A stretch of DNA of 60,919 nt from Macrostomum lignano (lineage: Eukaryota). The notes under the pieces are model-generated. The model was not told the origin of the DNA. It was given only the letters and a program-made list of their open reading frames with translations, and ran no database searches. The stretch covers positions 1 to 60,919 of the forward strand of contig NIVC01000682.1 of the NCBI GenBank assembly GCA_002269645.1. The letters run 5' to 3'. Shown piece by piece: positions 2,628-53,375 of this stretch. Position numbers and translations under genes: made by a program. The stretch's first letter is position 1. Every line of letters starts with the position of its first letter.

Positions 2628-3749
2628 TGTCGCTTGTGATCGTGTGTTTTGTTAAGACAGTCGCAGAACTGGCAATGACTTCACTTGAATACGCTGCTCC
2701 GAACGAATTGGTTATAACAGAGCCTACGGACTGCTGCTTTAATAATAATCTAGCTCGGAGGTTTCTTTATCTTTTAGACGCGAGTTGAATTCAACGACGC
2801 TGAGCGAAAGTATTACAGTGTAATCAGCAAACAAAACTCTTGTTCCAAGTGTGCGGACTTTATATAAACCGACTATAGGCGACGAAAGCTCAACTCACTC
2901 GCTAGGTGCCACTTCAGACAGACTTTTATACTCGTATATGGCACTACACTATATTTAACATGTCTCTCTAGTTCTACCTACACTACATGTAGCGTATGGC
3001 TGCATAAAACGTATAAGACATTAAGCATTCGCTTTGCCAAGCTAAACTCAAGCCAACATTTACTGTCTTACAAAGCGATGAATGTTTAATTAAAACTGGA
3101 CAGACAGAGAGAGAATATGCAGCAGGCTTCTCCATGGGGTATCTTGAATTAATATTCCTTAGCGTGCACGCGAACGTGAAGCCGTAGTAGCTGATCAACC
3201 TTAGGAAGTTATAAAGGTTAAAATGCAGAGTGCCTAGACCATGTACAATGTACGTTGTTACTATATGTGTGTACGTTATCACTGACTTACTTCAGATGAT
3301 CTTTGAGTATATATGCCTGTTATATAGATTTTTTCCGGTCGAATAGCACAAAATCCAACTCCATTTCAACATACGAGTACATAGCCCTCGATCTCAAGTG
3401 CATAAAATTCAGGGGATCTAGCATCGAAAACCCGAACTATCGTAACTCCAAATACGGTGCTAAAACTTTTCCGGTGTTGTGATTTTTCGGGTCTATGATG
3501 GCGACCCAACCGCTACTTAAAAGGCCAAACCAAGTGCGACAAAGCACCACTGCGCACACAACAATATAGATATGCTGTTGCCGAACCAGCCAGAATATCC
3601 GCTGCATGGGGACAGCAACGAGCGAGTCTGCTACTTAAAATGACTAACTAGATGTAGTTACTTGGGCTTTTTTAAACTCTCAATTGCATGACATTTCGCG
3701 GCTTATTTGGCTTGTTGCCGCTAAACTAGAATTGATTATGTCGCATTTG

Positions 3750-5066
3750 AGTTAGCTACCCCCCACCTTGTGACCCCTCGTAGTAATAAATAGTTTTGCT
3801 TCAGGGCGCCAGTCGATCCTGATTGTTATCTTCATAGATTGCAAGAAAGCATTAATTTCGACTCGGTCGTCAGGTCTGTGCTCCCAAATGTGCTCCGTGC
3901 GTACAGCGTGCCAGAGCAGCTGATTTCCGCCATCATGGCGATGTACCCTGATACGAAAGCTGCTGTTTCAACACCGGACGGCCTATCGGACTTCTTTGAG
4001 ACATCCTCCAGAGTGCTTCAGGGAGATACGCTTGCGCCGTTTCTGTTCGTTCTGGTGCTTGACTCGGCGCTGCGGACCGCTCTTCCTACCAACGACGATG
4101 GCTTTCTGTTGCGGCGACGCGAGGGTCGACGTCAACCGGAGAGGCGGCTCAGCGTGCTTGGCTACGACGACGATCTCGCCCCGTTGTCCTCAACTGTCAA
4201 GGGCGCCAAAGCGACAACTGGACAAGCTAGTTGCTGTTGCGGCGAGTCTCGGCCTGGTGGTCAACACGCAGAAGACCGTCGTGCTCTACGTGCCGGACGA
4301 CATCGAGGCTGCGATTTGGTGCCGAGGCGCTGATGAACAGGCGACAGAGCTTCCGCGTTGTCAGCAGTTCGTCTACCTCGACAATCTGGTTCCCGGTGTC
4401 CGCGAGGATTTGCGGCGTCGCCGCGGGCTTGCCTGGGCTGCCTTCCGCTCTGTGAGGGCAGTCCTGCAGTCCGAGGCCGTACCTGACCGCTAGAGGGCGG
4501 CGTTGTTCCAGGCGGTGGTCGAGACCGTCCTGCTGTACAACGCCGAGACCTGGACGCTGACGGAGTCGCTCGAGCAGCAAGTTGACGCGGCGCACGCTGG
4601 CCTGCTGCGCGCCGCCTTCAAGATCGGCTACGAGCGAGTGACCAACGCGGCTTTGTATCGCCGCACCAGCCTGGTCCGTCCAAGCGACCTGTTGCGCCGT
4701 CGGCGACTCCAGCTGGCAGGCCACATCATCCGAGCCGAGCCGTACTGCCCAGAGCCGCTGCAGGAGGTGCTGCTGCTAACGCTGCAGGCACCCTACCGGC
4801 GGGGGCAGGCGCGCACTCGGCGTTTCGTCGACTGCCTGCTGGCTGACGCCGGCGCCCCGGATTCGGCCGGCGGCGTGGCGTTCGTTCGCGACCCGACCTG
4901 GCCTTGAGGCGCGCCCTGTGATGCTAACTACGTATTCTGTTGTTGTTGTTCAGGGCGCCAAAATGAGTTCTAACAACACCGATTCTCAAAATAATGCACA
5001 TCTATGAATTTAGTCATGTACATGTACATGTAGAATCATTGGCTTTGTCCCCCCCACTATAAAATC
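3750..5066 (-). mobile_element. Degenerate copy of the hAT-type MITE of 18738-20169, with one 21-mer seed unit, split by an RTE LINE
   Basis: 3750-3811 and 4951-5066 match the reverse complement of the two flanks of the arrays at 18.7-20.2 kb and 21.3-22.2 kb (GGCGCCAAAATGAGT, GATTCTCAAAATAATG, CATGTACATG, GGCTTTGTCCC). Terminal TIRs are lost. Confidence 0.75.
3812..4948 (+). mobile_element. 5'-truncated, frameshifted RTE-clade non-LTR retrotransposon (RT C-terminal half)
   Basis: RT motifs QGDTLAPFLF and GYDDDL (YADD equivalent), then VLLYNAETW and LQLAGHIIR. One frameshift and one in-frame stop near 4491. (TGT)n tail; 12-bp TSD TTCAGGGCGCCA at 3800-3811 and 4949-4960. Confidence 0.92.
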
Positions 5067-5112
5067 GAAATACACGGATACGAAACAATAGCTACATGTA
5101 TTGATCCGTATT

Positions 5113-5530: not shown

Positions 5531-11292
<5,762 letters not shown>

Positions 11293-17000: not shown

Positions 17001-20000
17001 GAGGAGAAGAGAGGAGAGAGGAGAGGAGAGGAGAGGAGAGAGGAGAGGAGAGGAGAGGAGAGGAGAGAGGAGAAGGAGAGAGGAGGGAAAGGAGAAGGGA
17101 GAGGAAAGGGAGAGGAGAGGAGAGGAGAGGAGAGAGGAGAGGAGAGGAGAGGAGAGGAGAGGAGAGGAGAGAGGAGAGGAGAGGAGAGGAGAGGAGAGGA
17201 GAGAGGAGAGGAGAGGAGAAGAGAGGAGAGAGGAGAGGAGAGGAGAGGAGAGAGGAGAGGAGAGGAGAGGAGAGGAGAGAGGAGAAGGAGAGAGGAGGGA
17301 AAGGAGGAGAAGGGAGAGGAAAGGGGAGAGGAGAGGAGAGGAGAGAGGAGAGGAGAGGAGAGGAGAGGAGAGTAGAGGAGAGGAAAGGAGCGGAGAGGAG
17401 AGGAGAGGAGAGGAGAGGGGAGATGAAATAGAAGAGGAGAAAGGAGAGAGGAGAGGAGAGAGGAGAAGGAGAGAGGAGGGAAGGGAGGAGAAGGGAGAGG
17501 AAAGGGGAGAGGAGAGGAGAGGAGAGGAGAGGAGAGGAGAGGAGAGGAGAGGAGAGGAGAGGAGAGAAGAGGAGAGGAGAGGAGAGGAAAGGAGAGGAGA
17601 GGAGAGGAGAGGAGAGGAGAGGAGAGGAGAGGAGAGGAGAGGAGAGGAAAGGAGAGGAGAGGAGAGGAAAGGAGAGGAGGGGAGAGGGAAGGAGAGGAGG
17701 GGAGAGGTGAGGAGAGAGGAGAGGAGAGGAGAGGAGAGGAGAGGTGAGGAGATTAGATGAGAAGAGAGAGGTGAGAGAAGAGAACTGATAAGGGACATAA
17801 ACCTTGAGCGGACGGATTGCTATTGTGAAGCTTCAATTAGGACCCGCGGGCAGCAGTTTGCTGACTGCTGGCCTAGCATGACGGCAATTTACTCTCGTAA
17901 AAAAGTCACGAGGTTCGATCGCTCTCGCGGGCACACGTTGTTCTGCAGTTTATGTTTCGGAAAGCCTCAGACAAGTCGCGCGTGCGATTCACGAAGGCTA
18001 ACACGAAGGTTACAAAGGCTAACACCTAAAGACTTCAAGGTGTACACTGCCTGAAAATGAGGGAGAAAGCCCGGGCCCCCTGTACACCCTGTGGTAGCGT
18101 GCTCAGCAGTCAGCGGAATTGGTACAACTGCTTGTTACTTTGTTGGTTTGCCCTTGGTCTGCTCAAATCTGACACTTTGAGTCGCTAGTTGACTCACCGC
18201 TGATTAACCTCAACAATCCATCGCGTGTTGACATCCGTTGGAAGTTCAGGTTGCACAGACAACACCTGGGCGCCGAAGATGATGCGGCTGGTCAGCTGGA
18301 ACTGCTCAGCGTACAGGCGCAGGTACAGCAGCACCCAGCGGTTGTGCATGAAGGTTGGCGCACCCGCTGGTACAGGGAAATCGCTGAAACACGACATCTG
18401 CTTGCTGCTGATCATGGTGCAGCTGGAGTAGACGGATGCGTTTGATGTCGGATTTTTCGTGTTCCAGATTCCGCCTGATATTAATATTGATGTATGATTT
18501 GATGAAGCGCATGAAACAATTACCATAAAAGCTATTTACATTATAAGTAAACATAAGATATCATGCCTGACTCAAAACACCACCTACACTTTTCAAACAA
18601 GGAATGCTTAACGTGGCTGCATTGTACTCGTATTAAGCATGCTCTAAAGAGCACAGACTCTACATTCTCTAGGTTTGTCTCTCCAGAATTCGCTAATGTG
18701 TTGAGCGGCCTTCTCCGAGGCCACGAAAACCCCGGGACAGAGGCGTCGCCATGGATTTTATCGTGGGTGGGACAAAGCCAAGAATTCCACATGTACATGT
18801 ACAGGATTAAATTCCTACATGTACATTATTGTAAGAATCAGTGTTGTCAGCGCCCATTTTGGCGCCGCGGGCACTCATATTAGCGCCGCAGCCACTCATT
18901 TTGGCGCCGCAGGCACTTTGGCTCCGCAGGCACTCATATTGGCACTCATTTTAGCGCCGCAGGCACTCACTTTGTCGCCGCAGGCACTCATTTTGGCGCC
19001 GCAGGCACTCATTTTAGCGCCGCAGGCACTCATTTTGACGCCGCAGGCACTCATTTTGGCGCCGCAGGCACTCATTTTAGCGCCGCAGGCACTCATTTTG
19101 ACGCCGCAGGCACTCATTTTAGCGTCGCAGGCACTCATTTTAGCGCAACAGGCACTCATTTTGGCGCCGAAGGCACTCATTTTAGCGCCGCAGGCACTCA
19201 TTTTAGCGCCGCAGGCACTCATTTTAGCGCAACAGGCACTCATTTTGGCGCCGCAGGCACTCATTTTAGCGCCGCAGGCACTCATTTTAGCGCAACAGGC
19301 ACTCATTTTGGCGCCGCAGGCACTCATTTTAGCGCAACAGGCACTCATTTTAGCGCCGCAGGCACTCATTTTAGCGCAACAGGCACTCATTTTAGCGCCG
19401 CAGGCACTTATTTTGGCGGCGCAGGCACTCATTTTAGCGCAACAGGCACTCATTTTGGCGCCGCAGGCACTCATTTTAGCGCAACAGGCACTCATTTTAG
19501 CGCAACAGGCACTCATTTTAGCGCCGCAGGCACTCATTTTAGCGCAACAGGCACTCATTTTGGCGGCGCAGGCACTCATTTTGGCGGCGCAGGCACTCAT
19601 TTTGGCGGCGCAGGCACTCATTTTGACGCCGCAGGCACTCATTTTAGCGCCGCAGGCACTCATTTTAGCGCCGCAGGCACTCATTTTAGCGCAACAGGCA
19701 CTCATTTTAGCGCCGCAGGCACTCATTTTAGCGCCACAGGCACTCATTTTGACGCCGCAGGCACTCATTTTAGCGCCGCAGGCACTCATTTTAGCGCCGC
19801 AGGCACTCATTTTAGCGCAACAGGCACTCATTTTGGCGCAGCAGGCACTCATTTTAGCGCCGCAGGCACTCATTTTAGCGCAACAGGCACTCATTTTGGC
19901 GGCGCAGGCACTCATTTTGGCGCCGCAGGCACTCATTTTAGCGCCGCAGGCACTCATTTTGGCGGCGCAGGCACTCATATTGGCGCCGCAGGCACTCATT

Positions 20001-20410
20001 TTAGCGCCGCAGGCACTCATTTTGGCGGCGCAGGCACTCATATTGGCGCCGCAGGCACTCATTTTGGCGCCGCAGGCACTATATTTTGTCGCCCTGAAGC
20101 AAAGTTATTGATTTCCATAACCATAGCTTTTACTGGGGGGACATGTCCCCCCCGGTGGCGACGCCCCTGCCCCGGGGTTAGGGCCACAGGCACTTGATAG
20201 CAGCAGAAGCTACAGTCTATGGTCTCAACTCCGGGGTTTTGGGCTGCAGCCATGCAGCTGAAGTGAACCAGTGAACGCATGATGGAAACTGATCTCACCA
20301 ATATCGTCGCTAAGCTCATAGCAGACACAATCGAGGCCCTCTTCTAAGCAGCTTTTGATGCTCGCCAAGCCGCTGGGACCTGCTCCGATTATGCAGACAC
20401 ATTTGCTCAT
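14003..20410 (-). CDS. FMO: Flavin-containing monooxygenase (dimethylaniline monooxygenase type); 6 exons, complement(join 14003-14341, 14707-14892, 15001-15289, 16180-16626, 18198-18474, 20299-20410), 549 aa
   Basis: FAD motif GAGPSG, GGIWN, FMO fingerprint [11 protein letters not shown] (FxGxxxHxxxY), NADPH motif GLGNSG, FATGY, EAQARW, hydrophobic C-terminal anchor. All introns are GT-AG with compatible phases (1,2,2,0,0); spliced length 1650 nt. Confidence 0.95.
15385..16040 (+). repeat. 18-bp minisatellite (CTCTTGTGACTCTCCTGC)n, ~36 units, in FMO intron 3
   Basis: Direct repetition; source of the LVTLLP ORF. Confidence 0.97.
16671..17870 (+). mobile_element. hAT-type MITE (CAGGGGTCGG family) with a ~1-kb expanded (GGAGA)n tract, in FMO intron 2
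   Basis: Left CAGGGGTCGGTAAAC, right GTTTGCTGACTGCTG. 8-bp TSD GCCTAGGA / GCCTAGCA (7/8). Confidence 0.88.
18738..20169 (+). mobile_element. hAT-type MITE (CAGGGGCGTCGCCA TIR) with a ~58-unit 21-bp minisatellite (GCAGGCACTCATTTTAGCGCC)n, in FMO intron 1
   Basis: Left CAGAGGCGTCGCCA, right TGGCGACGCCCCTG. TSD CCCCGGGA / CCCCGGGG (7/8). Array spans ~18850-20085. Confidence 0.9.
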
Positions 20411-21319: not shown

Positions 21320-22215
21320 CGCCACGTCACCATGGATTTTATGACGGGGGGACAAAGCCCTCAATTCAACATGTACATGACTAAATTCCTACCTGTCCAT
21401 TATTTTGAGAATCTGTGTTGTCAGCGCTCATTTTAGCGCAGCAGGCACTCATTTTAGCGCCGCAGGCACTCGTTTTGGCGCCGCAGACACTCATTTTGAC
21501 GCCGCAGGCACTCATTTTAGCGCCGTAGGCACTCAATTTAGGGCCGCAGACACTCATTTTGACGCCGTAGGCACTCATTTTAGCGCCGTAGGCACTCATT
21601 TTAGCGCCACAGGAACTTATTTTAGCGCCGCAGGCACTCATTTTGACGCTGCAGGCACCCATTTTAGCGCCGCAGGCACCCATTTTAGCGCCGCAGGCAC
21701 TCATTTTAGCGCCGCAGGCACTCATTTTAGCGCCACAGGCACTCATTTTAGCGCCGCAGGCACTCGTTTTGGCGCCGCAGACACTCATTTTGACGCCGCA
21801 GGCACTCATTTTAGCGCCGTAGGCACTCATTTTAGCGCCGTAGGCACTCATTTTAGCGCCACAGGAACTTATTTTAGCACCGCAGGCACTCATTTTGACG
21901 CTGCAGGCACCCATTTTAGCGCCGCAGGCACTCATTTTGTCGCCGCAGGCACTCATTTTGGCGCCGTAGGCACTCATTTTAGCGCCGTAGGCACTCATTT
22001 TAGCGCCACAGGAACTCATTTTAGCACCGCAGGCACTCGTTTTGGCGCCGCAGACACTCATTTTAGCGCCGCAGGCACTCATTTTAGCGCCGCAGGCACC
22101 CATTTTAGCGCCGCAGGCACTCATTTTGGCGCCCTCAAGAAAAAATTTTTGATTTCCACAACGCGTCGCAAGGTGGGGTGGTGGGACAAAGCATTTTCGT
22201 GTCCTGTCCATAGTT
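21320..22215 (+). mobile_element. Diverged copy of the same MITE with a ~34-unit 21-bp array
   Basis: Left flank CATGGATTTT..GGGGGACAAAGCC..ACATGTACATG..TTATTTTGAGAATC matches 18750-18845. Same repeat unit at 21425-22132. TIRs eroded. Confidence 0.85.
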
Positions 22216-26479: not shown

Positions 26480-27270
26480 TACTGCTAAGATGTCAATTCT
26501 GCTGGGGGAAATTGCTGAGATGTCAAAGTTTATGGGGGTAAATTGCTGAGATGTCAAGGCTTACAGATGGAATTGCTGAGATGTCGACTGTCTGCTGGCT
26601 GACGCCGGCGCCCCGGACTCTGCCGGCGGTGCGGCCTTTGTTCGCGCCCAAGCCTTGAAGCGTGCCATCTGACGCTGCTTTTGCGATCCGGCAGCGTACT
26701 CTGTTGTTGTTGTTGTTGTTGAGATGTCAAGGCTTACAGGGGGAATTGCTGAGATGTCAAGGCTTACAGGGAAAATTGCTGAGATGTCAAGGCTTACAGG
26801 GGGAATTGCTGAGATGTCAACAAGGCTTACAGGGAGAGTTGCTGAGATGTCAAGGCTTACAGGGAGAGTTGCTGAGATGTCAAGGCTTACAGGGAGAGTT
26901 GCTGAGATGTCAAAGCTTACAGGGGGGGGAATCGCTGAGATGTCAACAAGGCTTACAGGGAGAGTTGCTGAGATGTCAAGGCTTACAGGGAGAGTTGCTG
27001 AGATGTCAAGGCTTACAGGGGGGGAATTGCTGAGATGTCAAGGCTTACAGGGAGAGTTGCTGAGATGTCAAAGCTTACAGGGGGGGGGAATTGCTGAGAT
27101 GTCAAGGCTTACAGGGAGAGTTGCTGAGATGTCAAAGCTTACAGGGGGGGGAATCGCTGAGATGTCAAGGCTTACAGGGAGAGTTGCTGAGATGTCAAAG
27201 CTTACAGGGGGGGGGAATTGCTGAGATGTCAAGGCTTACAGGGAGAGTTGCTGAGATGTCAAGGCTGTGA
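26480..27270 (+). repeat. 30-bp minisatellite (GCTGAGATGTCAAGGCTTACAGGGAGAGTT)n interrupted by a LINE 3' end
   Basis: Direct repetition; poly-G length variants. Confidence 0.95.
26586..26719 (+). mobile_element. Severely 5'-truncated RTE LINE 3' end (same family as 3812-4948)
   Basis: GACTGTCTGCTGGCTGACGCCGGCGCCCCGGA matches ~4829-4862; (TGT)n tail; TSD TGAGATGTC at 26577-26585 and 26720-26728. Confidence 0.9.
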
Positions 27271-27934: not shown

Positions 27935-29427
27935 CGTGCGGCCAGCGTCAGCTTAGAGTTCGCTATATATTTTATCAATTCTTAGTGACTACGTGTTGAA
28001 CTAAGGTTTTAAAAAGTAAATACACCGAGCACTGCTGCAACTACAGTACAGCTATAGATGCACTCTTAAACAAAGCATGATCCTGTCTGAGCTCCGTCGG
28101 AAATTTAGAGTATGAGTCAACCTTTTTTGTGCTTATTATAACTAGCTGGCGTTCAAATGAATGACATTACCCCGGTATATACACGTATGTTGTATTGTAG
28201 GATATGTACTTTTCATTAGCAAGTCAACAAGTTCAATAGTATTTATATGTAAATGTCTCTTTTTGGGGCTCCCCTGTCTCTTGATTGGCGCCCCTGTCTC
28301 TTAATTGGCGCCCGGCCTTGTCTCTGGATTGGCGCCCCAGCTACCCCATATCTTTTAGGCCGGTGGATGCTACTTCTACTACATGTAGGTGTCAAAATTT
28401 GAGCTCACGTGTCATTCGCTTACCAATCTTATTTAGTTTCTAGCACGGACTACTTCAGTAGAAGGACGCGACACGGGCAAAGCGTGCAAATTTTATTGGA
28501 GGCTGAATATTCAATTTTATGTAGTCCGACTTCAGAAACACCGAAGTATAGTTTTTTCACAGGATGCACATTACTTGTCCTTGTTGATGTGAGATATGTA
28601 ATGTATGATTAAAACGATGCAGAAACCTTAGAAATTAGTTTCAAGCGACGAGAACTAGCTTTTGTCTGGTGAGTTTCGAAGTGCGACAACTATATGGCAT
28701 AAATATGGCTCTTCAATTTGATAGTTATAGCACCTACTTTAAACGATGCTTCAGTACACGCCGTTCATTGTAACCGTGCAGCAAACCTTTAATCTGGGCG
28801 TACGAAAAACCTATTGCAGACGTACAGGTATAAATACCACCGGTTCTGTGCCCATCGCATCGGATAAATAGAATCAAAAGACGAAATAAGACAAAAGATT
28901 TTGAGAATAAGAATCTTAAGTTTTAAGTTTATAAGTAAGTTAAGGCCTACAAATGTTACAATGATTAGGGCTTACAATTGTTAAAATAATCTAAAAATTA
29001 GAAAACTGGTGCCTAATTGTGTGCCACTAGTGTGCCTTATGCATTGTATAGTTATAAACTATATGGGTTGAAGAGTAAAGGTTTTGCTTGTTTCATTGTA
29101 CTTCTGTACTATTACTCATCATTTGCCTAGCTAATTTACCTGCCCCCCTCCGCGCCTCACGCCACCTTTTCTCACCGCCTCCATATTGATTTGTTATAAC
29201 GTACATTGCAAGTCATGCACACTTACAACCCCCCGCTAAAGCCTGTGTCAACCCCGCCATATATTATATTGAGAATAAATATACCTAGCTCAAGAGTAGA
29301 CTGCGCGGACCCTTTTGATTTTGTTCTTCTACGATTGTCAATTGCGAGGCGAGCCGCCAAGTGCTGTGTTCTCAGTTCTTAAGAATCTCTTGTTAACATT
29401 TTTGGTAGCAGAGCGTGGTTCAGGTAA

Positions 29428-31578
29428 ATGGCCAGCCACGAATCGAATCAGCAGCAGACTGGCTGCTCAGAAGATGAAGAAGAAAAAGAGATCAGCACTG
29501 AGGAGCGGCTTCGCATCGAACAGTTTCGACGAGTGAAGGCAAGAACGAAGTCTGCAGGAACTAGGAGTCGAAACCGTCTGGTACTGTTGCTACAGAGCGA
29601 CACCGATCATGAAGCGATCCAGCAAGCGTGCGATGCAGCCACTGCAGCACACGAAGAGTGCGTGAAGCTGCTTGACGAATTCTATGATGAGCTCCTTCAG
29701 CAAGAAGCCACAGAAGAAGCTCGAGACAAACTTCTGGACGAGCTGGATCAAGTGGAGCAGCAGTTTCAAGACACTGTGAAATGTGTCACTCAATTCATCA
29801 CTGCTCATCAGACTGCCGTGACAGCTGCGCCTGCGGCGACTGCCGTGACAGCTGCGCCTGCGGCGACTGCCGCGACTGCCGCGACTGCGGCTACGGCCAT
29901 GCCGGTTGTGAGTGCCAGTAGTATTGATGACTCTGTAAGTGAGGCGGGCCATTCTCAGACTAGCAGCGGTGAAGCCGAGTTAGCAAAGGATCTTTGGAAG
30001 ATGCTTCGGCGTGTAGAGATCCCAAAGTTCGGCGGCGAAAAGCAGCAGTACGAATCTTGGAAAGCCGCCTTTACTGCTTGTATTGATAGAGCTCCTGCCA
30101 CGCCGGAGTTCAAATTGCTTCAACTCCGTCAATATCTTCAAGGGCCGGCTTTGAAATTAGTCGAACATCTGGGTCACTCTGCCGCTGCTTACGAGGCTGC
30201 CAAAGACAGATTGGAACGCGAATTCGGGGGCAGCCGCCGACGTATCGCTCTGTATCTTGAAGAGCTCGATAACTTTCCACCCATCCGCTCCACCAATGCA
30301 AAAGAGCTTAAGCAATTCTCTAATCTGTTAGATGTCGCAGTTGTAAATCTCGAAGAGTCTGGTAAGGTCTCAGAATTGACTGACGGGTTGTTGTACGCAA
30401 AGTTGCAGAAGAAGCTCCCTGAGCAGATGGTGGCGCGTTACCGGCGTTGGCTATTCGAAGGACATAGGCAAGAGAGCGTTAAGATGTTACGTGAGTGGGT
30501 GCTTATAGAAGCCGCTTTCCAGACAGAAGCCATGGAGATTGTGCACGGTGTGACGAGTGAAGAGAAGGTTAAGAAGGAGACGCGGTCCAAAACGTTTCTT
30601 GCAGATCATCAACAAGCGTCTCCGTCAAAATCTTGTATGCTGTGTCAAGATCAACATGAGCTGTGGAAGTGTCCAACATTTAGACAGCTGTCAATTGAAA
30701 ATCGGTGGAAGGCTGCGCAAGATTCGAAATCATGCTTTTACTGCTTAGCTCGCAGTCATGCTGCTCGGATATGCCGTCATGGACGCCGATGTGGAATCGG
30801 TGAATGCAACAAGTTTCACCACCGCTTGCTGCACTCTGACGAGGCTGCAAAAACTGAGTCGAAGAAGAATTCTCCGGCCGAAGGAGGCAAAAAGAAGGCT
30901 GAGTCGGGTCGCAAAGGAGCCGCCGTAACTATGATGGCAGGAAATGGAAGTGCAACGTCGCTGCGAACAGTTCCAGTAGTTCTCAAGGCAGGTGGCCGTG
31001 TAGTGAAGGTGAACGCACTGTTGGACGACGCGAGTACAAGGACGTATGTGAATGCAGAAATTGCTGAAGCTCTGGGACTGGAGGGCAATGTGGAGCGAGT
31101 GAAAGTGAACGTTTTGAACGGACAGACAGAGACATTGTTGACAGCTCCGGTTACGATGACGCTCGAAAGTGTAGATGGAAGTCTGAGTCGTCCGATCACG
31201 GCATTCACGACAGACAGCGTCACCGGGAAGCTGAAGGCCACGGATTGGCAGACGACAGCAGTGGATTGGAAACATCTGGAGCGTATTCCATTTCCTCAGC
31301 TCCATGCGCCGCATCTCATAGACCTGTTGATAGGAGTGGATCATGCGGAGTTACATGTGTCCTACCGAGAAGTTCGCGGTGGCCCTGGGGAGCCACAGGC
31401 ACGTTTGACTCCCCTTGGATGGACAGGTGTGGGTCCAGTAGAACAGATTCAGCATCAGACAAACTTGGCCAGCACCTTTTTCTGTCACCAGCGAGGAGAT
31501 GCTGTCACCAGTGCTGCGCAAGTTCTGGGAGGTCGAAGAAATCCGGCCAGCTCAAGATCAAAATTGGACAGCGGATGA
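29428..31578 (+). CDS. BEL/Pao Gag plus aspartic protease ORF (716 aa; the last ~25 codons are out of the pol frame)
   Basis: IPKFGG, LRQYLQGPA (BEL Gag block), three zinc knuckles (CMLCQDQHELWKC, CFYCLARSHAARIC, CGIGECNKFHHRLLH), protease motif ALLDDASTRTYV. Confidence 0.9.
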   Translation: MASHESNQQQTGCSEDEEEKEISTEERLRIEQFRRVKARTKSAGTRSRNRLVLLLQSDTDHEAIQQACDAATAAHEECVKLLDEFYDELLQQEATEEARDKLLDELDQVEQQFQDTVKCVTQFITAHQTAVTAAPAATAVTAAPAATAATAATAATAMPVVSASSIDDSVSEAGHSQTSSGEAELAKDLWKMLRRVEIPKFGGEKQQYESWKAAFTACIDRAPATPEFKLLQLRQYLQGPALKLVEHLGHSAAAYEAAKDRLEREFGGSRRRIALYLEELDNFPPIRSTNAKELKQFSNLLDVAVVNLEESGKVSELTDGLLYAKLQKKLPEQMVARYRRWLFEGHRQESVKMLREWVLIEAAFQTEAMEIVHGVTSEEKVKKETRSKTFLADHQQASPSKSCMLCQDQHELWKCPTFRQLSIENRWKAAQDSKSCFYCLARSHAARICRHGRRCGIGECNKFHHRLLHSDEAAKTESKKNSPAEGGKKKAESGRKGAAVTMMAGNGSATSLRTVPVVLKAGGRVVKVNALLDDASTRTYVNAEIAEALGLEGNVERVKVNVLNGQTETLLTAPVTMTLESVDGSLSRPITAFTTDSVTGKLKATDWQTTAVDWKHLERIPFPQLHAPHLIDLLIGVDHAELHVSYREVRGGPGEPQARLTPLGWTGVGPVEQIQHQTNLASTFFCHQRGDAVTSAAQVLGGRRNPASSRSKLDSG

Positions 31579-32845
31579 GCAAGCTGTAGTCGAGCAAGCC
31601 AAGTCTTCATTAAAGCTAACAAACGGCCGATACCAGATGGGAATTCCGTGGAAGCCAGAGGCGAAAGTTCGCTCGAATAACTATGAGATGGCGATCATAC
31701 AGCTTTGTAACACGGAGACTCGGTTGAAGAAGGATCTGGAGGTGGCAAAGCAATACCAAGCATGCCTAGAGCGATATGGGCAACAAGGCTACATTCGGCA
31801 CGTTGCAGTAGAGGGGTTCACAGCCAGGTGTTTTCTGCCGCATTTTTTGATTATTCGATTCGACAAGCTGACGACAAAGGTTCGAATCGTCTTCGATGCC
31901 TCGGCGGGCGGGAACGAAAAGTCGTTAAACTCTCTGGTCTTCCCAGGGCCGAAGCTTCAGCGAGAATTGTTTGACGTTCTGCTTCGCTTCAGGAGAGATG
32001 CAGTGGCTGTGGCTTGTGACATCTCCGAGATGTACCTCCAGATCGAAATGGCGCCGGAGGACAGGCCGACGCATAGCTTTATATGCCGTGAGATGGACTC
32101 TAGCAAGCCTGTTGAAATTTTTGAGACCAAACGCATCGTTTTCGGAAACTCGAGCTCGCCGTTTCTTGCTCAGTTCGTAGTTCGTGAGCATGCGGAACGC
32201 CTGAAAGAAGAGCTGCCATTAGCTGCAGACGCTGTTCTCAACTCCACCTATATGGACGATTGTTTAGATTCGGTCGGGTCAGAGGCTGAGGCGATCCAGC
32301 TGTTTCAAGAGTTGAAGACTCGCTGGGAGCGTGCAGGCATGGAATTGTTGAGCAGAGTGCCACTAGAAGATCGAGTAGCCGAAGTAACATTGGAAGGGAC
32401 ACCGATGCCATCCATAAAGACGCTTGGTGTAGAATGGAGAAGCGATCGGAACAAGTGCACCTTTAAAGTCGACCAGCCGTTTGCTGCGAACCGCATCAGA
32501 GAGACCAAGTCTGTCACAGATCCGGACCAGTGGAGGTGTGCCAATGCTTTGTCTCGAGGAACTTCAGCGAAGCAGCTGACGGAGGTTGACAGCTGGTGGC
32601 ATGGACAAAGGGTGACTGGTCGGAGCACAGTCGTTAGCATGAATGAGGAACGATCGGCGGTCAGACGATTAGACCCGACCATGGCGACCAGGTTCTCGAG
32701 CTCAAAGCGGCGCATCTGCATGCAAGGCGAGACAGCTCGATTCGCGACCATCTGCTGGCTGCCGCGGAGAGACGGGTGCGAGTTGCAAAAGTGCAGCTGG
32801 TTGGCAAGGCCTCCGCGAGGCCAACTGCGAGGCTGCGTCCGCTAA
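31499..32845 (+). pseudogene. BEL/Pao pol remnant: RT core present; RNase H region and integrase largely deleted
   Basis: RKFWEVE, RIVFDAS, DISEMYLQI, FGNSSSPFLA, YMDD, KTLGVEW, then abrupt jumps to ANRI..SRG..WWHG and RFSS fragments. No DDE integrase core. Frameshifted relative to Gag. Confidence 0.88.
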
Positions 32846-34196
32846 TCACGAAGGGAGGCTTTAGAACTGACTAGTTGAGGTTTTGGCCGAACTTTCTTTT
32901 GTGGCTTTTGAGAGCTTTGCTTCCCTGCGCATTAAATCCAGTTTGGTTCGATCGCATTGTGTTTTTTCACTTCTGCTGTCTATTTTTGGGAGTTTTTGTG
33001 TTTGTTTTTTGTGTCTCTTTTTTTGTTTGTTTTCTTTTTTTGTGTTTTTTGTGTTTTTTTGTGTTTTTTGCTTGTTTGGCGTTTGTTGCGAAGAGGTTTT
33101 GCATACTCTGTTCGGTTAGCTTTCCCATTTTTCAGCGTTTATCCCCTTTGCTCATTTCATCGCACTGTACGCTACATTTCAGGTTCAATCCCGTTTGCTA
33201 ATTCAGTTCGAATATTTATCGCATCCCCGTGATTCGTTTACTAACCTAATTATTTGATCCTATTTTCACTTTGTCATTTTGTCGAGCGTATTGCATCCTA
33301 GCGATTTAACTTTTTTCCTGAAAAGTACGCGGTACTATAATAATTGAATGTTTTAATTTTAAGATCTTTGTTCGAGGTGCTCTTTGTTTTGTTGGCATGT
33401 GCTCATGCCAAGAAGGGAGGTATGGATTGAAGAGTAAAGGTTTTGCTTGTTTCATTGTACTTCTGTACTGTTACTCATCATTTGCCTAGCTAATTTACCT
33501 GCCCCCCTCCGCGCCTCACGCCACCTTTTCTCACCGCCTCCATATTGATTTGTTATAACGTACATTGCAAGTCATGCACACTTACAACCCCCCCCGCTAA
33601 AGCCTGTGTCAACCCCGCCATATATTATATTGAGAATAAATATACCTAGCTCAAGAGTAGACTGCGCGGACCCTTTTGATTTTGTTCTTGCCGCCAAGTG
33701 CTGTGTTCTCAGTTCTTAAGAATCTCTTGTTAACACTATAAATCTTGTAACATTAGAGGTAGAATACCTCTTTACCTCGCTGGGCAAGCTAGAATATCTT
33801 AGTCTAACTCTAAGTCTAGCTAGAGTATAGTATTGTTGTTTATTAGGTATCCAATTTAATTAAAAATAAAGTTTCTAAAATATACTTCCTTGAACTCAAA
33901 ACAATGCAATAATACATACTATCCATGGGCATAGTCAATAGGCCCTAGATAAGATAAAAGTCGGAAGTCTTGCATAGTCAGCCAGGCGTTAAATCTTTAA
34001 AGCAACTGAGCTACTTGGTAGCAAGAATTTGCTTTTACACTTGACATGATTTAGCTTACAGTCAGTTTTTTCGGCAATCTAGTTTTACCGCGATAATTTT
34101 TTTAAAAACTTTAATTGCGAGTTAGTTACGCGGTCTACATGCATAATATGTAAAATAGCTAGGGCTTATATAAATATTATACAGTAAGCTAGGGCC

Positions 34197-37771: not shown

Positions 37772-40700
37772 ATGTCCCAGTCGCGTTCTCGTTCGCTGTC
37801 GCGGTCTCCGCGTTCGCCGCGCCTGCTTGAACGCCAGGAACTTCAACGTCGCGGCAGCTTCAGCCGCAGTCGTAGCTGCAGTCCACTAGGCGCTGGCGCT
37901 GCAGTCTTGTCAGCTCCAACGCGATCCAGGCGTCTGCAGTCCAAAAAGGTTGCCATGTTGAATTTGCCCTACAGCATTGAGGTGCTACGATTGAAGAGTA
38001 TTGTTAGAGAGCGATTGGGCTTCACCGGCTACCTCACTCTGTTAGAAGAACAGGGCAGATTCTCCGGCATCGGCTACATGGACTTTAGAACATATGAAGG
38101 CGCTGAGGAAGCCATTCAACGATTGAACGGCATGGACATTGATGGGCGTAGGATCAAGGTAGACTGCTTGTGTTTATCAGCAACATGCTGTGGGGACTAG
38201 TGTTCTTTGTAGCCCAGTTTGACTGTCTATAGTGCCAATCTGACTGTCTATAGTGCCAATCTGACTGTCTATAGTGCCAATCTGACTGTCTATAGTGACA
38301 ATCTGACTGTCTATAGTGGCAATTTGACTGTCTATAGTGACAATCTGACTGTCTATAGTGACAATCTGACTGTCTATAGTGCCAATCTGACTGTCTATAG
38401 TGACAATCTGACTGTCTATAGTGACAATCTGACTGTCTATAGTGTGACTGTCTATAGTGACAATCTGACTGTCTATAGTGTATAGTGCCAATCTGACTGT
38501 CTATAGTGACAATCTGACTGTCTATAGTGACGACTGTCTATAGTGACAATCTGACTGTCTATAGTGACAATTTGACTGTCTATAGTGCCAATCTGACTGT
38601 CTATAGTGACAATCTGACTGTCTATAGTGACAATCTGACTGTCTATAGTGACAATTTGACTGTCTATAGTGACAATCTGACTGTCTATAGTGCCAATCTG
38701 ACTGTCTATAGTGACAATCTGACTGTCTATAGTGACAATCTGACTGTCTATAGTGACAATCTGACTGTCTATAGTGACAATCTGACTGTCTATAGTGACA
38801 ATTTGACTGTCTACGGTATAGTGCCAATCTGACTGTCTATAGTGACAATCTGACTGTCTATAGTGACAATCTGACTGTCTATAGTGACAATCTGACTGTC
38901 TATAGTGACAATTTGACTGTCTACGGTATAGTGCCAATCTGACTGTCTATAGTGACAATCTGACTGTCTATAGTGACAATCTGACTGTCTATAGTGACAA
39001 TTTGACTGTCTATAGTGACAATCTGACTGTCTATAGTGCCAATCTGACTGTCTATAGTGACAATCTGACTGTCTATAGTGACAATCTGACTGTCTATAGT
39101 GACAATCTGACTGTCTATAGTGGCAATTTGACTGTCTATAGTGCCAATCTGACTGTCTATAGTGACAATCTGACTGTCTATAGTGACAATCTGACTGTCT
39201 ATAGTGCCAATCTGACTGTCTATAGTGCCAATCTGACTGTCTATAGTGCCAATCTGACTGTCTATAGTGCCAATCTGACTGTCTATAGTGCCAATCTGAC
39301 TGTCTATAGTGACAATCTGACTGTCTATAGTGACAATTTGACTGTCTATAGTGCCAATCTGACTGTCTATAATGACAATCTGACTGTCTATAGTGACAAT
39401 CTGACTGTCTATAGTGCCAATCTGACTGTCTATAGTGCCAATCTGACTGTCTATAGTGCCAATCTGACTGTCTATAGTGACAATCTGACTGTCTATAGTG
39501 CAATTGACTGTCTATAGTGACAATCTGACTGTCTATAGTGACAATCTGACTGTCTATAGTGCCAATCTGACTGTCTATAGTGACAATCTGACTGTCTATA
39601 GTGACAATCTGACTGTCTATAGTGGCAATTTGACTGTCTATAGTGCCAATCTGACTGTCTATAGTGCCAATCTGACTGTCTATAGTGACAATCTGACTGT
39701 CTATAGTGACAATTTGACTGTCTATAGTGCCAATCTGACTGTCTATAGTGACAATCTGACTGTCTATAGTGACAATCTGACTGTCTATAGTGGCAATTTG
39801 ACTGTCTATAGTGACAATCTGACTGTCTATAGTGACAATCTGACTGTCTATAGTGCCAATCTGACTGTCTATAGTGCCAATCTGACTGTCTATAGTGCCA
39901 ATCTGACTGTCTATAGTGCCAATCTGACTGTCTATAGTGACAATCTGACTGTCTATAGTGCCAATCTGACTGTCTATAGTGACAATCTGACTGTCTATAG
40001 TGACAATTTGACTGTCTATAGTGCCAATCTGACTGTCTATAGTGACAATCTGACTGTCTATAGTGACAATCTGACTGTCTATAGTGCAATCTGACTGTCT
40101 ATAGTGACAATCTGACTGTCTATAGTGCCAATCTGACTGTCTATAGTGCCAATCTGACTGTCTATAGTGACAATCTGACTGTCTATAGTGACAATCTGAC
40201 TGTCTATAGTGACAATCTGACTGTCTATAGTGCCAATCTGACTGTCTATAGTGACAATCTGACTGTCTATAGTGCCAATCTGACTGTCTATAGTGACAAT
40301 CTGACTGTCTATAGTGACAATCTGACTGTCTATAGTGACAATCTGACTGTCTATAGTGACAATCTGACTGTCTATAGTGCCAATCTGACTGTCTATAGTG
40401 CCAATCTGACTGTCTATAGTGACAATTTGACTGTCTATAGTGACAATCTGACTGTCTATAGTGACAATTTGACTGTCTATAGTGACAATCTGACTGTCTA
40501 TAGTGCCAATCTGACTGTCTATAGTGACAATCTGACTGTCTATAGTGACAATCTGACTGTCTATAGTGACAATCTGACTGTCTATAGTGCCAATCTGACT
40601 GTCTATAGTGACAATCTGACTGTCTATAGTGACAATTTGACTGTCTATAGTGACAATCTGACTGTCTATAGTGCCAATCTGACTGTCTATAGTGACAATC

Positions 40701-43700
40701 TGACTGTCTATAGTGACAATCTGACTGTCTATAGTGACAATCTGACTGTCTATAGTGGCAATTTGACTGTCTATAGTGACAATCTGACTGTCTATAGTGA
40801 CAATCTGACTGTCTATAGTGACAATTTGACTGTCTATAGTGACAATTTGACTGTCTATAGTGACAATCTGACTGTCTATAGTGACAATTTGACTGTCTAT
40901 AGTGACAATCTGACTGTCTATAGTGCCAATCTGACTGTCTATAGTGACAATCTGACTGTCTATAGTGACAATCTGACTGTCTATAGTGCAATTGACTGTC
41001 TATAGTGACAATCTGACTGTCTATAGTGACAATCTGACTGTCTATAGTGCCAATCTGACTGTCTATAGTGACAATCTGACTGTCTATAGTGACAATTTGA
41101 CTGTCTATAGTGACAATCTGACTGTCTATAGTGCAATTGACTGTCTATAGTGACAATCTGACTGTCTATAGTGACAATCTGACTGTCTATAGTGCCAATC
41201 TGACTGTCTATAGTGACAATTTGACTGTCTATAGTGACAATTTGACTGTCTATAGTGACAATTTGACTGTCTATAGTGACAATCTGACTGTCTATAGTGG
41301 CAATTTGACTGTCTATAGTGACAATCTGACTGTCTATAGTGACAATCTGACTGTCTATAGTGCCAATCTGACTGTCTATAGTGACAATCTGACTGTCTAT
41401 AGTGCCAATCTGACTGTCTATAGTGCCAATCTGACTGTCTATAGTGACAATCTGACTGTCTATAGTGACAATTTGACTGTCTATAGTGACAATTTGACTG
41501 TCTATAGTGACAATTTGACTGTCTATAGTGCCAATCTGACTGTCTATAGTGACAATCTGACTGTCTATAGTGACAATCTGACTGTCTATAGTGACAATCT
41601 GACTGTCTATAGTGACAATCTGACTGTCTATAGTGCCAATCTGACTGTCTATAGTGCCAATCTGACTGTCTATAGTGCCAATCTGACTGTCTATAGTGCC
41701 AATCTGACTGTCTATAGTGCCAATCTGACTGTCTATAGTGACAATCTGACTGTCTATAGTGACAATTTGACTGTCTATAGTGCCAATCTGACTGTCTATA
41801 GTGACAATCTGACTGTCTATAGTGACAATCTGACTGTCTATAGTGCCAATCTGACTGTCTATAGTGACAATCTGACTGTCTATAGTGCCAATCTGACTGT
41901 CTATAGTGACAATCTGACTGTCTATAGTGACAATCTGACTGTCTATAGTGCTAATCTGACTGTCTATAGTGACAATCTGACTGTCTATAGTGCCAATCTG
42001 ACTGTCTATAGTGCCAATCTGACTGTCTATAGTGACAATCTGACTGTCTATAGTGACAATCTGACTGTCTATAGTGACAATCTGACTGTCTATAGTGCCA
42101 ATCTGACTGTCTATAGTGACAATCTGACTGTCTATAGTGCCAATCTGACTGTCTATAGTGACAATCTGACTGTCTATAGTGACAATCTGACTGTCTATAG
42201 TGACAATCTGACTGTCTATAGTGACAATCTGACTGTCTATAGTGCCAATCTGACTGTCTATAGTGCCAATCTGACTGTCTATAGTGACAATCTGACTGTC
42301 TATAGTGACAATCTGACTGTCTATAGTGACAATTGACTGTCTATAGTGACAATCTGACTGTCTATAGTGCCAATCTGACTGTCTATAGTGACAATCTGAC
42401 TGTCTATAGTGACAATCTGACTGTCTATAGTGACAATCTGACTGTCTATAGTGCCAATCTGACTGTCTATAGTGACAATCTGACTGTCTATAGTGACAAT
42501 TGACTGTCTATAGTGACAATCTGACTGTCTATAGTGCCAATCTGACTGTCTATAGTGACAATCTGACTGTCTATAGTGACAATCTGACTGTCTATAGTGA
42601 CAATCTGACTGTCTATAGTGCCAATCTGACTGTCTATAGTGACAATCTGACTGTCTATAGTGACAATCTGACTGTCTATAGTGACAATTGACTGTCTATA
42701 GTGACAATTTGACTGTCTATAGTGACAATCTGACTGTCTATAGTGACAATTTGACTGTCTATAGTGACAATCTGACTGTCTATAGTGCCAATCTGACTGT
42801 CTATAGTGACAATCTGACTGTCTATAGTGACAATCTGACTGTCTATAGTGACAATTGACTGTCTATAGTGACAATCTGACTGTCTATAGTGACAATCTGA
42901 CTGTCTATAGTGACAATCTGACTGTCTATAGTGACAATCTGACTGTCTATAGTGACAATTGACTGTCTATAGTGACAATCTGACTGTCTATAGTGACAAT
43001 TGACTGTCTATAGTGACAATCTGACTGTCTATAGTGACAATCTGACTGTCTATAGTGACAATCTGACTGTCTATAGTGACAATTTGACTGTCTATAGTGA
43101 CAATTTGACTGTCTATAGTGACAATTTGACTGTCTATAGTGACAATCTGACTGTCTATAGTGCAATTGACTGTCTATAGTGACAATCTGACTGTCTATAG
43201 TGACAATCTGACTGTCTATAGTGCCAATCTGACTGTCTATAGTGACAATCTGACTGTCTATAGTGCAATCTGACTGTCTATAGTGCCAATCTGACTGTCT
43301 ATAGTGACAATCTGACTGTCTATAGTGACAATTTGACTGTCTATAGTGACAATTTGACTGTCTATAGTGACAATTTGACTGTCTATAGTGCCAATCTGAC
43401 TGTCTATAGTGACAATCTGACTGTCTATAGTGACAATCTGACTGTCTATAGTGACAATCTGACTGTCTATAGTGACAATTTGACTGTCTATAGTGACAAT
43501 CTGACTGTCTATAGTGCCAATCTGACTGTCTATAGTGACAATCTGACTGTCTATAGTGACAATCTGACTGTCTATAGTGACAATCTGACTGTCTATAGTG
43601 ACAATCTGACTGTCTATAGTGCCAATCTGACTGTCTATAGTGCAATCTGACTGTCTATAGTGCCAATCTGACTGTCTATAGTGCCAATCTGACTGTCTAT

Positions 43701-52975: not shown

Positions 52976-53375
52976 CTTTTTTCGTTCTAATTCGATAAAA
53001 ACTGCATTCAATTTCGGCAAACTGTCTTTCATTTTCGGCATCAGCTACGGCCGCACATCCAAACTGCATTCGAATTCGACAAACCGCGAGAACCGATTTC
53101 GGCAACTCGAGTTTCTATTTAGACAAACTGATATACAAACTCGGCAAACTGTATTAAAACTGCATTGGCGCTGTCGAAATTGAGCGCAGTTTGCCGAAAT
53201 TGAAAATCAGTTTTTGGGTTTAGATGCGCTTTTATTTCCGTAGACAGTCTGTGGCACGAGGCGCTTGCTGCAGAAATTGAATGCAGTTTTGGATGTGCGG
53301 CCGTAGCTGATGCCGAAAATGAAAGACAGTTTGCCGAAATTCAATGCAGTTTTATCGAAATAGAACGCAAAAAGG
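52976..53375. mobile_element. ~400-bp foldback MITE with ~95-bp terminal inverted repeats
   Basis: CGTTCTAATTCGATAAAAACTGCATTCAATTTCGGCAAACTGTCTTTCATTTTCGGCATCAGCTACGGCCGCACATCC is mirrored almost exactly at ~53280-53370. TSD not clear. Confidence 0.85.

What the first reader, a model, noticed from the sequence alone, without database searches (positions are those of the whole stretch)
18738..20169. A hAT-type MITE family acts as a minisatellite vector: the same 21-mer occurs at 1, 1, ~34 and ~58 units in four copies
Seen: four copies share the unique flanks of one element (3750-5066, 5914-6032, 18738-20169, 21320-22215). Two carry a single GGCGCCAAAATGAGTGCCTGC-type unit and two carry long arrays. 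The 18738 copy has intact CAGGGGCGTCGCCA-type TIRs and a 7/8 8-bp TSD. Known: 8-bp TSDs with CAGGG termini are typical of hAT elements. Inference: the element disperses a seed that then expands locally, which would explain how introns in this genome acquire arrays. This is the best candidate here for a systematic, possibly undescribed process.
Basis: partly seen in the sequence, partly recalled or inferred. Interest (0 to 1): 0.7.

Follow-up and report, generated by a model that had tools for sequence, protein, structure and literature searches.

The report
Decayed hAT-like MITE carrying a minisatellite
Four worn copies of one small non-autonomous DNA transposon carry the same 21-base motif as 1, at least 1, 34 and 59 tandem units, which is a new example of the already described way that transposons spread tandem-repeat arrays.

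Summary
Four copies of one element lie at 3744-5079, 5913-6039, 18738-20169 and 21321-22195, with arm matches of E 1e-15 to 1e-43. The 18738 copy has 14-bp inverted ends (13/14) and an 8-bp flanking duplication (7/8). It fills 78% of intron 1 of a flavin monooxygenase gene. Its array has 59 units and the 21321 array has 34.

Only one copy is intact, so the hAT assignment rests on three CAGNG termini and one duplication. One "single-unit" copy (5913) is truncated exactly at the array edge, so its unit count means little.

The two long arrays have the same 21/21 consensus, the same deviant first unit and the same G-type last unit. Their arms are only 71-84% identical. Their common progenitor therefore already carried at least 2-3 units, not a single seed. 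Later growth at each site is real: 62-74% of units are array-private types, and one 8-unit block is repeated at 167/168.

No other copies could be fetched, so the genome-wide claim is untested. MITEs that carry one monomer or a variable array are already described (miDNA4, Xstir, DTC84). This is a new member of a known kind, of modest interest.

The parts
18738..20169 (+). Copy A: the only structurally intact element (1432 bp). It has a 5' arm, a 59-unit 21-bp array and a 3' arm. It lies in intron 1 of an FMO-like gene that is read on the minus strand.
18730..18737 (+). Left target-site duplication of A, CCCCGGGA
   Evidence: matches 20170-20177 at 7/8
18738..18751 (+). 5' TIR of A, CAGAGGCGTCGCCA
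18846..20093 (+). Array of A. The first unit is deviant (GTCAGCGCCCATTTTGGCGCC). Units 2-6 are degenerate. About 52 units are in register with consensus GCAGGCACTCATTTTAGCGCC. The last unit is degenerate.
20094..20169 (+). 3' arm of A with a subterminal palindrome (GGGGGGACATGTCCCCCC) and the 3' TIR (20156-20169)
   Evidence: fold z = -3.7
20170..20177 (+). Right target-site duplication of A, CCCCGGGG
21321..22195 (+). Copy B: 5' arm (21321-21419, outer ~6 bp of the TIR lost), 34-unit array (21420-22133), 3' arm remnant (22134-22195, no TIR). It lies 910 bp upstream of the FMO start codon.
3744..5079 (-). Copy C: 5' arm (5079-4976), a single first-type unit (4975-4955), and a 3' arm remnant (3806-3744). 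It is interrupted by a retroelement and has no recognisable TIRs.
3812..4948 (+). 5'-truncated non-LTR retroelement (RT fragment, (TTG)n tail) inserted into copy C at the junction of the unit and the 3' arm. Its TSD is TTCAGGGCGCCA (3800-3811 and 4949-4960).
   Evidence: RVT_1, E 1.3e-4
5913..6039 (-). Copy D: TTGTC, one array-type unit (6034-6014), a full 3' arm and the 3' TIR (CAGTGGCTTCGCCA at 5913-5926). The 5' side is missing and a SINE abuts at 6040.
20299..20410 (-). FMO-like gene, coding exon 1 ([15 protein letters not shown]...DDIG). Its splice donor is at 20298-20297.
   Evidence: (PF00743 positions 2-37, E 8.6e-12)
18197..18474 (-). FMO-like gene, exon 2, with the acceptor AG at 18476-18475. 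The low-coordinate end given here is where the open frame ends; the exon's own end was not mapped. Intron 1 is 18475-20298 (1824 bp), and copy A makes up 78% of it.
   Evidence: (PF00743 positions 37-126, E 1.4e-17)

Best explanation
This is an old, mostly decayed family of small non-autonomous DNA transposons (MITEs), about 250 bp long without the array. Its termini and target duplication fit the hAT superfamily. The element has an internal 21-bp motif that ends in the palindrome GGCGCC.

Proposed history:
1. In a progenitor copy the motif duplicated and the new unit diverged, from GTCAGCGCY... to GCAGGCAC....
2. A short proto-array of at least 2-3 units then rode on the element to new sites by cut-and-paste, using a transposase supplied in trans.
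3. After insertion each array changed length on its own, by replication slippage and unequal exchange of single units and multi-unit blocks.
4. The termini decayed, which leaves immobile minisatellites such as B.

Shown directly: the family relationship, the termini, the TSD, the unit counts, the shared array architecture, the array-private variants, the block duplication and the intronic position.

Inferred: hAT membership, mobilisation in trans, the order of events and the slippage or exchange mechanism.
For: - Arm homology links all four copies.
- All three available termini read CAGNG, and A has an 8-bp TSD at 7/8.
- A and B share a first unit of the type seen in C, an identical 21/21 array consensus that differs from that first unit, a G-type last unit, and the GA and GT site variants. 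Their arms are only 83.5% (5') and 70.6% (3') identical.
- 33 of 53 units in A and 25 of 34 in B are of types private to that array.
- In B, units 3-5 plus 8-12 recur as units 17-24 at 167/168 identity.
- A shows periodicity at lags of 3 and 7 units, and B at about 12-14 units.
- Units differ from their own consensus by 6-8%. I compare this with the roughly 8-12% per-copy arm divergence that I estimate from the 16-23% pairwise 5'-arm divergence, and conclude that the arrays are old rather than recent bursts.
- The published miDNA4 model is the same: a monomer or a variable array inside a MITE, followed by loss of the terminal repeats (PMC12628747, PMC9659126).
Against: - There are only four copies and only one is intact. 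No external copies could be retrieved.
- A and B lie 1.15 kb apart in the same orientation. Gene conversion between them could have produced the shared consensus and shared variants.
- The TSD of A is palindromic, and it fits neither of the two published hAT target consensus patterns (from my own knowledge).
- No hAT transposase or autonomous partner is present in the window.
- The unit does not form unusually stable single-strand structure (z = +0.47), so no intrinsic driver of slippage was found.
Confidence: 0.6

Rival explanations
1. The element disperses a single 21-bp unit, and each long array is an independent expansion from that one unit at its own site.
For: - Copy C has exactly one unit between both arms. 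The clean 12-bp TSD of the retroelement inserted there shows that nothing was deleted.
- Most units in A and B are private variants.
Against: - Expansion of the only unit, as seen in C, would give arrays of first-type units. Instead A and B both keep one first-type unit followed by units of a different type.
- The two arrays have an identical 21/21 consensus although their arms differ by 16-29%.
- Both arrays end in the same G-type unit and share the GA and GT variants.
- The unit in D is array-type and sits at a truncation point.
Confidence: 0.15
2. Long arrays were transposed essentially intact. The one-unit copies are secondary collapses or truncations.
For: - D has an array-type unit directly at a truncation point.
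- An in-register collapse between the first and last unit would rebuild exactly the one-unit form seen in C, so a collapse would leave no trace.
- The arrays are old, with units 6-8% from their consensus.
Against: - A and B differ in length (59 versus 34 units) and share only three exact unit types, which account for 20 of 53 units in A and 9 of 34 in B.
- The duplicated block in B is made of B-private variants.
- The unit in C has no array-type character.
- In the 5' arm, where only A, B and C can be compared, C is the most divergent copy. That fits an older form that predates the array.
Confidence: 0.15
3. A and B are not separate transposition events. They are related by local duplication, or are kept alike by gene conversion, because they flank exon 1 only 1.15 kb apart. 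On this reading the shared array architecture says nothing about the mobile progenitor.
For: - They have the same orientation and lie 1.15 kb apart.
- B lacks both termini and has no TSD.
- C and D also form a close pair in the same orientation, 834 bp apart.
Against: - There is no homology outside the element boundaries.
- A has its own TSD.
- The arms are 16-29% diverged, and the 3' arm of B is closer to D than to A.
- Private variants dominate both arrays, which argues against ongoing conversion.
- hAT elements are known to reinsert nearby (from my own knowledge), and that would equally explain the pairs.
Confidence: 0.1

Closest known systems
miDNA4, a Tc1/mariner MITE of Xenopus tropicalis that carries a satellite motif (Scalvenzi & Pollet 2014, as summarised in PMC12628747 and PMC9659126)
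   Same: A MITE with an internal motif that exists either as a single monomer or as an array of variable copy number. Arrays lengthen inside the element. Decay of the terminal repeats leaves ordinary tandem arrays. Copy B here looks like that end state.
   Different: The superfamily differs: Tc1/mariner with a TA target versus CAGNG termini with an 8-bp TSD here. The unit here is a 21-bp minisatellite, not a satellite-sized monomer. Only four copies could be examined here, against a genome-wide analysis for miDNA4.
DTC84 and pearl-type tandem-repeat-containing MITEs of bivalves (PMC3879986); Helentron-borne satellite-like arrays of the Pacific oyster (PMC7492417)
   Same: A central array of core repeats sits in a 'cassette' of flanking arms. 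Repeat variants hold fixed positions (here the first and last units). A palindrome lies at the unit junction (here GGCGCC). Every copy has a different repeat number.
   Different: DTC84 has up to five core repeats, a linked microsatellite and a putative AA target duplication. The pearl-type and oyster elements are linked to Helentrons. Here the arrays reach 34-59 units and the termini are of hAT type.
Xstir / Xmix MITE-derived tandem repeats of Xenopus (Hikosaka & Kawahara 2004, as cited in PMC12628747)
   Same: Tandem repeats ride on a MITE. Three states coexist: the MITE alone, a composite of MITE and array, and an array alone.
   Different: In Xstir the repeat unit derives from the TIR or the whole internal MITE sequence, through a proposed stem-loop mechanism. 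Here the unit is a short internal motif, and it shows no excess folding.
hAT superfamily non-autonomous elements (for example the Mar MITEs of Drosophila, cited in PMC9659126)
   Same: An 8-bp TSD, short TIRs that begin YARNG, small size and no coding capacity.
   Different: No transposase partner or dimerisation-domain remnant is available to test membership. The single TSD does not fit the usual hAT target consensus patterns.

Membership tests
hAT superfamily (non-autonomous member / MITE) | 8-bp target-site duplication | tested here: met
   Copy A has CCCCGGGA and CCCCGGGG, 7/8. This is a single copy. The sequence is palindromic, so it is also complementary. The boundary is confirmed independently by copy D, which ends at CAG with an unrelated flank.
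hAT superfamily (non-autonomous member / MITE) | Short TIRs beginning 5'-YARNG (Rubin et al. 2001, from my own knowledge) | tested here: met
   The three available termini read CAGAG (A, 5' end), CAGGG (A, 3' end) and CAGTG (D, 3' end). The TIR is 14 bp and matches at 13/14.
hAT superfamily (non-autonomous member / MITE) | An autonomous partner with matching TIRs that encodes a hAT transposase (DDE/RNase-H-like core and a C-terminal hAT dimerisation domain) | not testable with these tools
   No such ORF is in the window. No further sequence from this species could be fetched.
hAT superfamily (non-autonomous member / MITE) | Target-site consensus nTnnnnAn (Ac type) or nnnTAnnn (Buster type). 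This is typical but not defining (from my own knowledge). | tested here: not met
   CCCCGGGR fits neither pattern. With one copy, and a feature that is only a statistical tendency, this carries little weight.
MITE (miniature inverted-repeat transposable element) | Small, non-coding, TIR-bounded, TSD-flanked, and present in multiple dispersed copies | tested here: met
   The element is about 250 bp without its array. It has no ORF other than repeat-derived frames. There are four copies in 61 kb. One copy has both TIRs and a TSD, and one copy has one TIR.
Tandem-repeat-containing MITE / TE-borne satellite seed (miDNA4-like model) | The same internal motif is present as a monomer in some copies and as arrays of variable length in others | tested here: met
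   The counts are 1 (C), at least 1 (D, truncated), 34 (B) and 59 (A) units.
Tandem-repeat-containing MITE / TE-borne satellite seed (miDNA4-like model) | Array length changes after insertion (growth specific to each locus) | tested here: met
   Array-private unit types make up 62% of A and 74% of B. An 8-unit block is duplicated within B at 167/168 identity.
Tandem-repeat-containing MITE / TE-borne satellite seed (miDNA4-like model) | Genome-wide relation between unit number, copy age and integrity of the termini | not testable with these tools
   Only the 61-kb window is available.

The most novel reading that the evidence does not exclude
In this unidentified invertebrate-like genome, which is extremely rich in minisatellites, mobile elements that carry short proto-arrays could be the main systematic source of intronic and intergenic minisatellites. 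Most arrays would then trace back to a few TE families whose termini have since decayed. Two independent families in this one window already show the pattern of shared flank and variable unit number: the 21-mer MITE, and the 20-mer at 6775-7643 and 28254-28338.
Probability: 0.15. Interest if true: 0.5.

Novelty: new member of a known kind. Interest (0 to 1): 0.27.

Why it matters
The finding gives a clean local example of how a transposon can place a minisatellite in and next to a gene. One insertion enlarged FMO intron 1 from about 0.4 kb to 1.8 kb. A second array lies 0.9 kb upstream of the start codon. The two arrays have the same orientation and flank exon 1, so they are a possible substrate for recombination that would delete it.

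If the family is abundant, it would help to explain the unusual minisatellite load of this genome. It would also offer a system for studying array growth in which the age of the arms serves as a clock. Conceptually it adds nothing beyond the published MITE-to-satellite models.

Tried and rejected
- More copies outside the window. Exact-pattern scans with the unit, a unit dimer and a degenerate 5'-arm pattern found 0 hits in metagenome, prokaryote-genome and viral contigs.
- More sequence from the same genome through proteins. The BEL/Pao gag ORF is not on record. The FMO exon gave no hit at E <= 1e-10. The BEL/Pao pol has its best hits at 51% identity or less, in molluscs, sponges, crinoids and corals. 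The RRM exons have best hits at 46-55% identity. The species is therefore not identified, and no related loci were worth fetching.
- Rfam and tRNA scans of the window found nothing.
- A literature search for the unit and TIR strings found 0 papers.
- The rest of copy D beyond the SINE. No 5' arm is detectable there; alignment scores are at shuffle level.
- TIRs around the other 20 arrays. None is convincing, with z <= 3.4.
- The 30-mer array at 26.5-27.3 kb as a retroelement-tail array. Rejected: the array was there first, and a 130-bp retroelement tail inserted into it with its own TSD.
- Hairpin-driven slippage. Rejected: the unit tetramer folds no better than shuffles.
Full report
**1. What is in the sequence**

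The window is eukaryotic and very rich in tandem repeats; TRF returns 60 rows. The region of the finding holds a 1432-bp element, copy A, at 18738-20169.

- It begins with CAGAGGCGTCGCCA and ends with TGGCGACGCCCCTG, whose reverse complement is CAGGGGCGTCGCCA. The inverted repeat is 14 bp and matches at 13/14.
- It is flanked by CCCCGGGA (18730-18737) and CCCCGGGG (20170-20177). A match of 7/8 or better at a fixed position has a chance of about 4e-4.
- Between a 108-bp 5' arm and a 76-bp 3' arm lies a 21-bp array.

Searches with the arms by BLAST and by nhmmer profiles find three further copies and nothing else in the window.

- Copy B is 21321-22195 on the plus strand.
- Copy C is 5079-3744 on the minus strand.
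- Copy D is 6039-5913 on the minus strand.
- E-values run from 1e-15 to 1e-43, so the family relationship is not due to chance.

**2. Anatomy of the copies**

Only copy A is intact.

Copy B keeps the inner part of the 5' TIR (CGTCACCATGG against CGTCGCCATGG). It has lost the outer ~6 bp, and it ends after GGGACAAAGCATT in the 3' arm, with no 3' TIR.

Copy C has both arms but no recognisable TIRs.
- It is split by a 1137-bp, 5'-truncated non-LTR retroelement at 3812-4948. This has an RVT_1 match and a (TTG)n tail.
- The retroelement's 12-bp target duplication, TTCAGGGCGCCA, shows a clean insertion.
- With the insert removed, C reads 5' arm, GTTAGAACTCATTTTGGCGCC, CTGAAGC... and so has one unit.

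Copy D has the full 3' arm and a TIR (CAGTGGCTTCGCCA).
- On the other side only TTGTC precedes its single unit, GCAGGCACTCATTTTGGCGCC.
- A tRNA-headed SINE then begins at 6040, and no 5' arm is detectable beyond that SINE.
- Its unit count is therefore not interpretable.

Because the TSD of A is a palindrome, it could in principle be an extension of the TIR. Copy D ends at the same CAG with an unrelated flank, which supports the boundary.

**3. Gene context**

A flavin monooxygenase gene is read on the minus strand.
- Exon 1 (ATG at 20410, ending at 20299) matches Pfam FMO-like positions 2-37.
- Exon 2 (starting at 18474) matches positions 37-126.
- A further exon matches positions 147-272.
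- Intron 1 is 18475-20298, or 1824 bp. Copy A makes up 78% of it.
- Copy B lies 910 bp upstream of the start codon.

**4. The arrays**

A unit-by-unit parse gives 59 units in A and 34 in B. Several features are shared.

- Both arrays start with a deviant first unit. This is GTCAGCGCCCATTTTGGCGCC in A and GTCAGCGCTCATTTTAGCGCA in B. It is the counterpart of the only unit in C.
- The remaining units have the same 21/21 consensus in both arrays, GCAGGCACTCATTTTAGCGCC.
- Both arrays end with a G-type unit (...TTTTGGCGCC). Copy D's single unit is of the same G type, and C's single first-type unit ends in the same TTTTGGCGCC.
- Both contain the TTTTGACGCC and TTTTGTCGCC site variants.

In contrast, the arms of A and B are only 83.5% (5') and 70.6% (3') identical.

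An array grown from the single unit of a C-like copy would consist of first-type units. It could not reach the same different consensus twice. The array-type unit therefore existed before A and B separated. With the shared A-type majority and G-type end, their progenitor most probably carried at least three units.

The unit in D is also array-type. This places D with the array-bearing lineage. C looks like the older form that predates the array, or else like a fully collapsed array; the two cannot be told apart at one locus.

**5. Local growth**

Growth at each site is nevertheless real.
- Only three exact unit types are shared. 33 of 53 in-register units of A and 25 of 34 units of B are private types.
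- A is dominated by a private ...GCGCA|ACAGG... unit junction and by GGCGGC units.
- B is dominated by GTAGG, GCAGAC and CACCCA units.
- In B, units 3-5 plus 8-12 recur as units 17-24 with one difference in 168 bp. Part of the block recurs a third time.
- Unit autocorrelation shows weak higher-order periodicity, at lags 3 and 7 in A and 12-14 in B.

This is the signature of slippage or unequal exchange involving single units and multi-unit blocks.

Units differ from their own consensus by 6-8%. From the 16-23% pairwise 5'-arm divergence I estimate roughly 8-12% divergence per copy, which is similar. The arrays are therefore old rather than recent bursts.

The unit tetramer does not fold better than shuffled sequence (z = +0.47), so no structural driver was found. 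The palindrome GGCGCC lies at the unit junction, as noted for DTC84 core repeats (PMC3879986).

**6. Most likely mechanism**

- The element is a non-autonomous, hAT-like cut-and-paste transposon.
- An internal motif duplicated in a progenitor copy.
- The resulting proto-array was carried to new sites.
- Each array then expanded and turned over locally.
- The termini decayed, which leaves immobile minisatellites.

The hAT assignment rests on three CAGNG termini and one 8-bp TSD. No transposase partner is available, and the TSD does not fit the usual hAT target patterns.

The main alternative for the A/B similarities is gene conversion or local duplication, because the two copies lie 1.15 kb apart in the same orientation. 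Against this are the lack of flank homology, the divergent arms, and the dominance of private variants.

**7. Generality**

- Of 21 arrays in the window, only A shows flanking inverted repeats (z = 8.7; all others z <= 3.4).
- Of 13 minisatellite motifs, only two recur elsewhere in the window.
- The second is a 20-mer present as 43 units at 6775-7643 and about 4 units in reverse orientation at 28254-28338. The two sites share a left flank of about 75 bp (score 24.5 against a shuffle maximum of 17.5).
- This is a second instance of a shared flank with variable unit number. It does not show that the process explains most arrays.

**8. External evidence**

None could be obtained.
- Pattern scans of metagenome, prokaryote-genome and viral contigs gave no hit.
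- Protein searches gave only distant relatives, at 55% identity or less, among marine invertebrates. One named hit is a bivalve.

**9. Comparison with what is known**

The pattern is already described.
- miDNA4 is a MITE whose satellite motif [quoted passage not shown]. Longer arrays later lose their terminal repeats (PMC12628747; also PMC9659126).
- Xstir/Xmix shows tandem repeats riding on a MITE.
- DTC84 and pearl-type elements of bivalves have ordered core-repeat variants in a flanking cassette (PMC3879986).
- In the Pacific oyster, Helentron elements carry satellite-like arrays (PMC7492417).

What differs here is the superfamily signature (hAT-like), the short 21-bp unit and the long arrays of 34-59 units.

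**10. Verdict**

The element does act as a vector and the arrays did grow locally, but what was dispersed to A and B was already a small array.
- The process is not new. This is a new member of a known kind, with interest about 0.27.

Noticed in passing
6775-7643 (+) and 28254-28338 (-), with flanks 6700-6775 and 28338-28420: A second dispersed family has the same behaviour. The 20-mer GGGGCGCCCACCAAGAGACA is present as 43 units at one site and about 4 units, in reverse orientation, at the other. The two sites share a left flank of about 75 bp (...GTAGCATCCACCGGCCT...). No shared right flank or TIR was found.
   Followed up: partly
3812-4948 (+) and 26586-26715 (+): One non-LTR retroelement family with a (TTG)n tail has inserted twice. 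The first insertion is in MITE copy C (TSD TTCAGGGCGCCA). The second is a 130-bp tail fragment inside the 30-bp minisatellite (TSD TGAGATGTC), so that array is older than the insertion.
   Followed up: partly
6040-~6320 (+) and 5107-~5330 (+): A SINE with a tRNA-like head and an (ATT)n tail is present as one full copy and one 5'-truncated copy. Each lies beside a MITE copy on the same side: the full copy abuts D, and the truncated copy starts 27 bp beyond C. The SINE contains TGGCGACCCCCCAG, which matches the MITE 3' terminus TGGCGACGCCCCTG at 12/14. ARAGORN and Rfam do not call it.
   Followed up: partly
52976-53374: A foldback or MITE-like element of about 400 bp has TIRs of about 100 bp that match at 94%. 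The TIRs are themselves built of ~21-bp subrepeats (AAACTGCATTCAATTTCGGC / AAACTGTCTTTCATTTTCGGC).
   Followed up: partly
29062-33735: A BEL/Pao-type LTR retrotransposon has LTRs that are 98.5-100% identical (29062-29398 and 33421-33735). It has a gag/protease ORF (716 aa; DUF1759 and Asp_protease_2 matches) and an RT ORF (448 aa). It looks young. Its best database relatives are 51% identical or less.
   Followed up: partly
38220-46770: An 8.5-kb minisatellite of 408 units of the 21-mer TGACTGTCTATAGTGACAATC (95% matches) lies between ORFs that look like RRM exons of an hnRNP-M-like gene. No solo unit or second array of this motif occurs in the window.
   Followed up: no
18846-20093 and 21420-22133: G-type units contain TTTGGCGC, which matches the E2F-site consensus TTTSGCGC (from my own knowledge). 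Dozens of such motifs therefore sit in intron 1 and 0.9 kb upstream of the FMO start codon. No functional test was possible.
   Followed up: no
20132-20155: The 3' arm of copy A has a perfect 18-bp palindrome, GGGGGGACATGTCCCCCC, next to the TIR. The arm folds far better than shuffled sequence (z = -3.7). Copy D has a longer G-run/C-run hairpin at the same place.
   Followed up: partly
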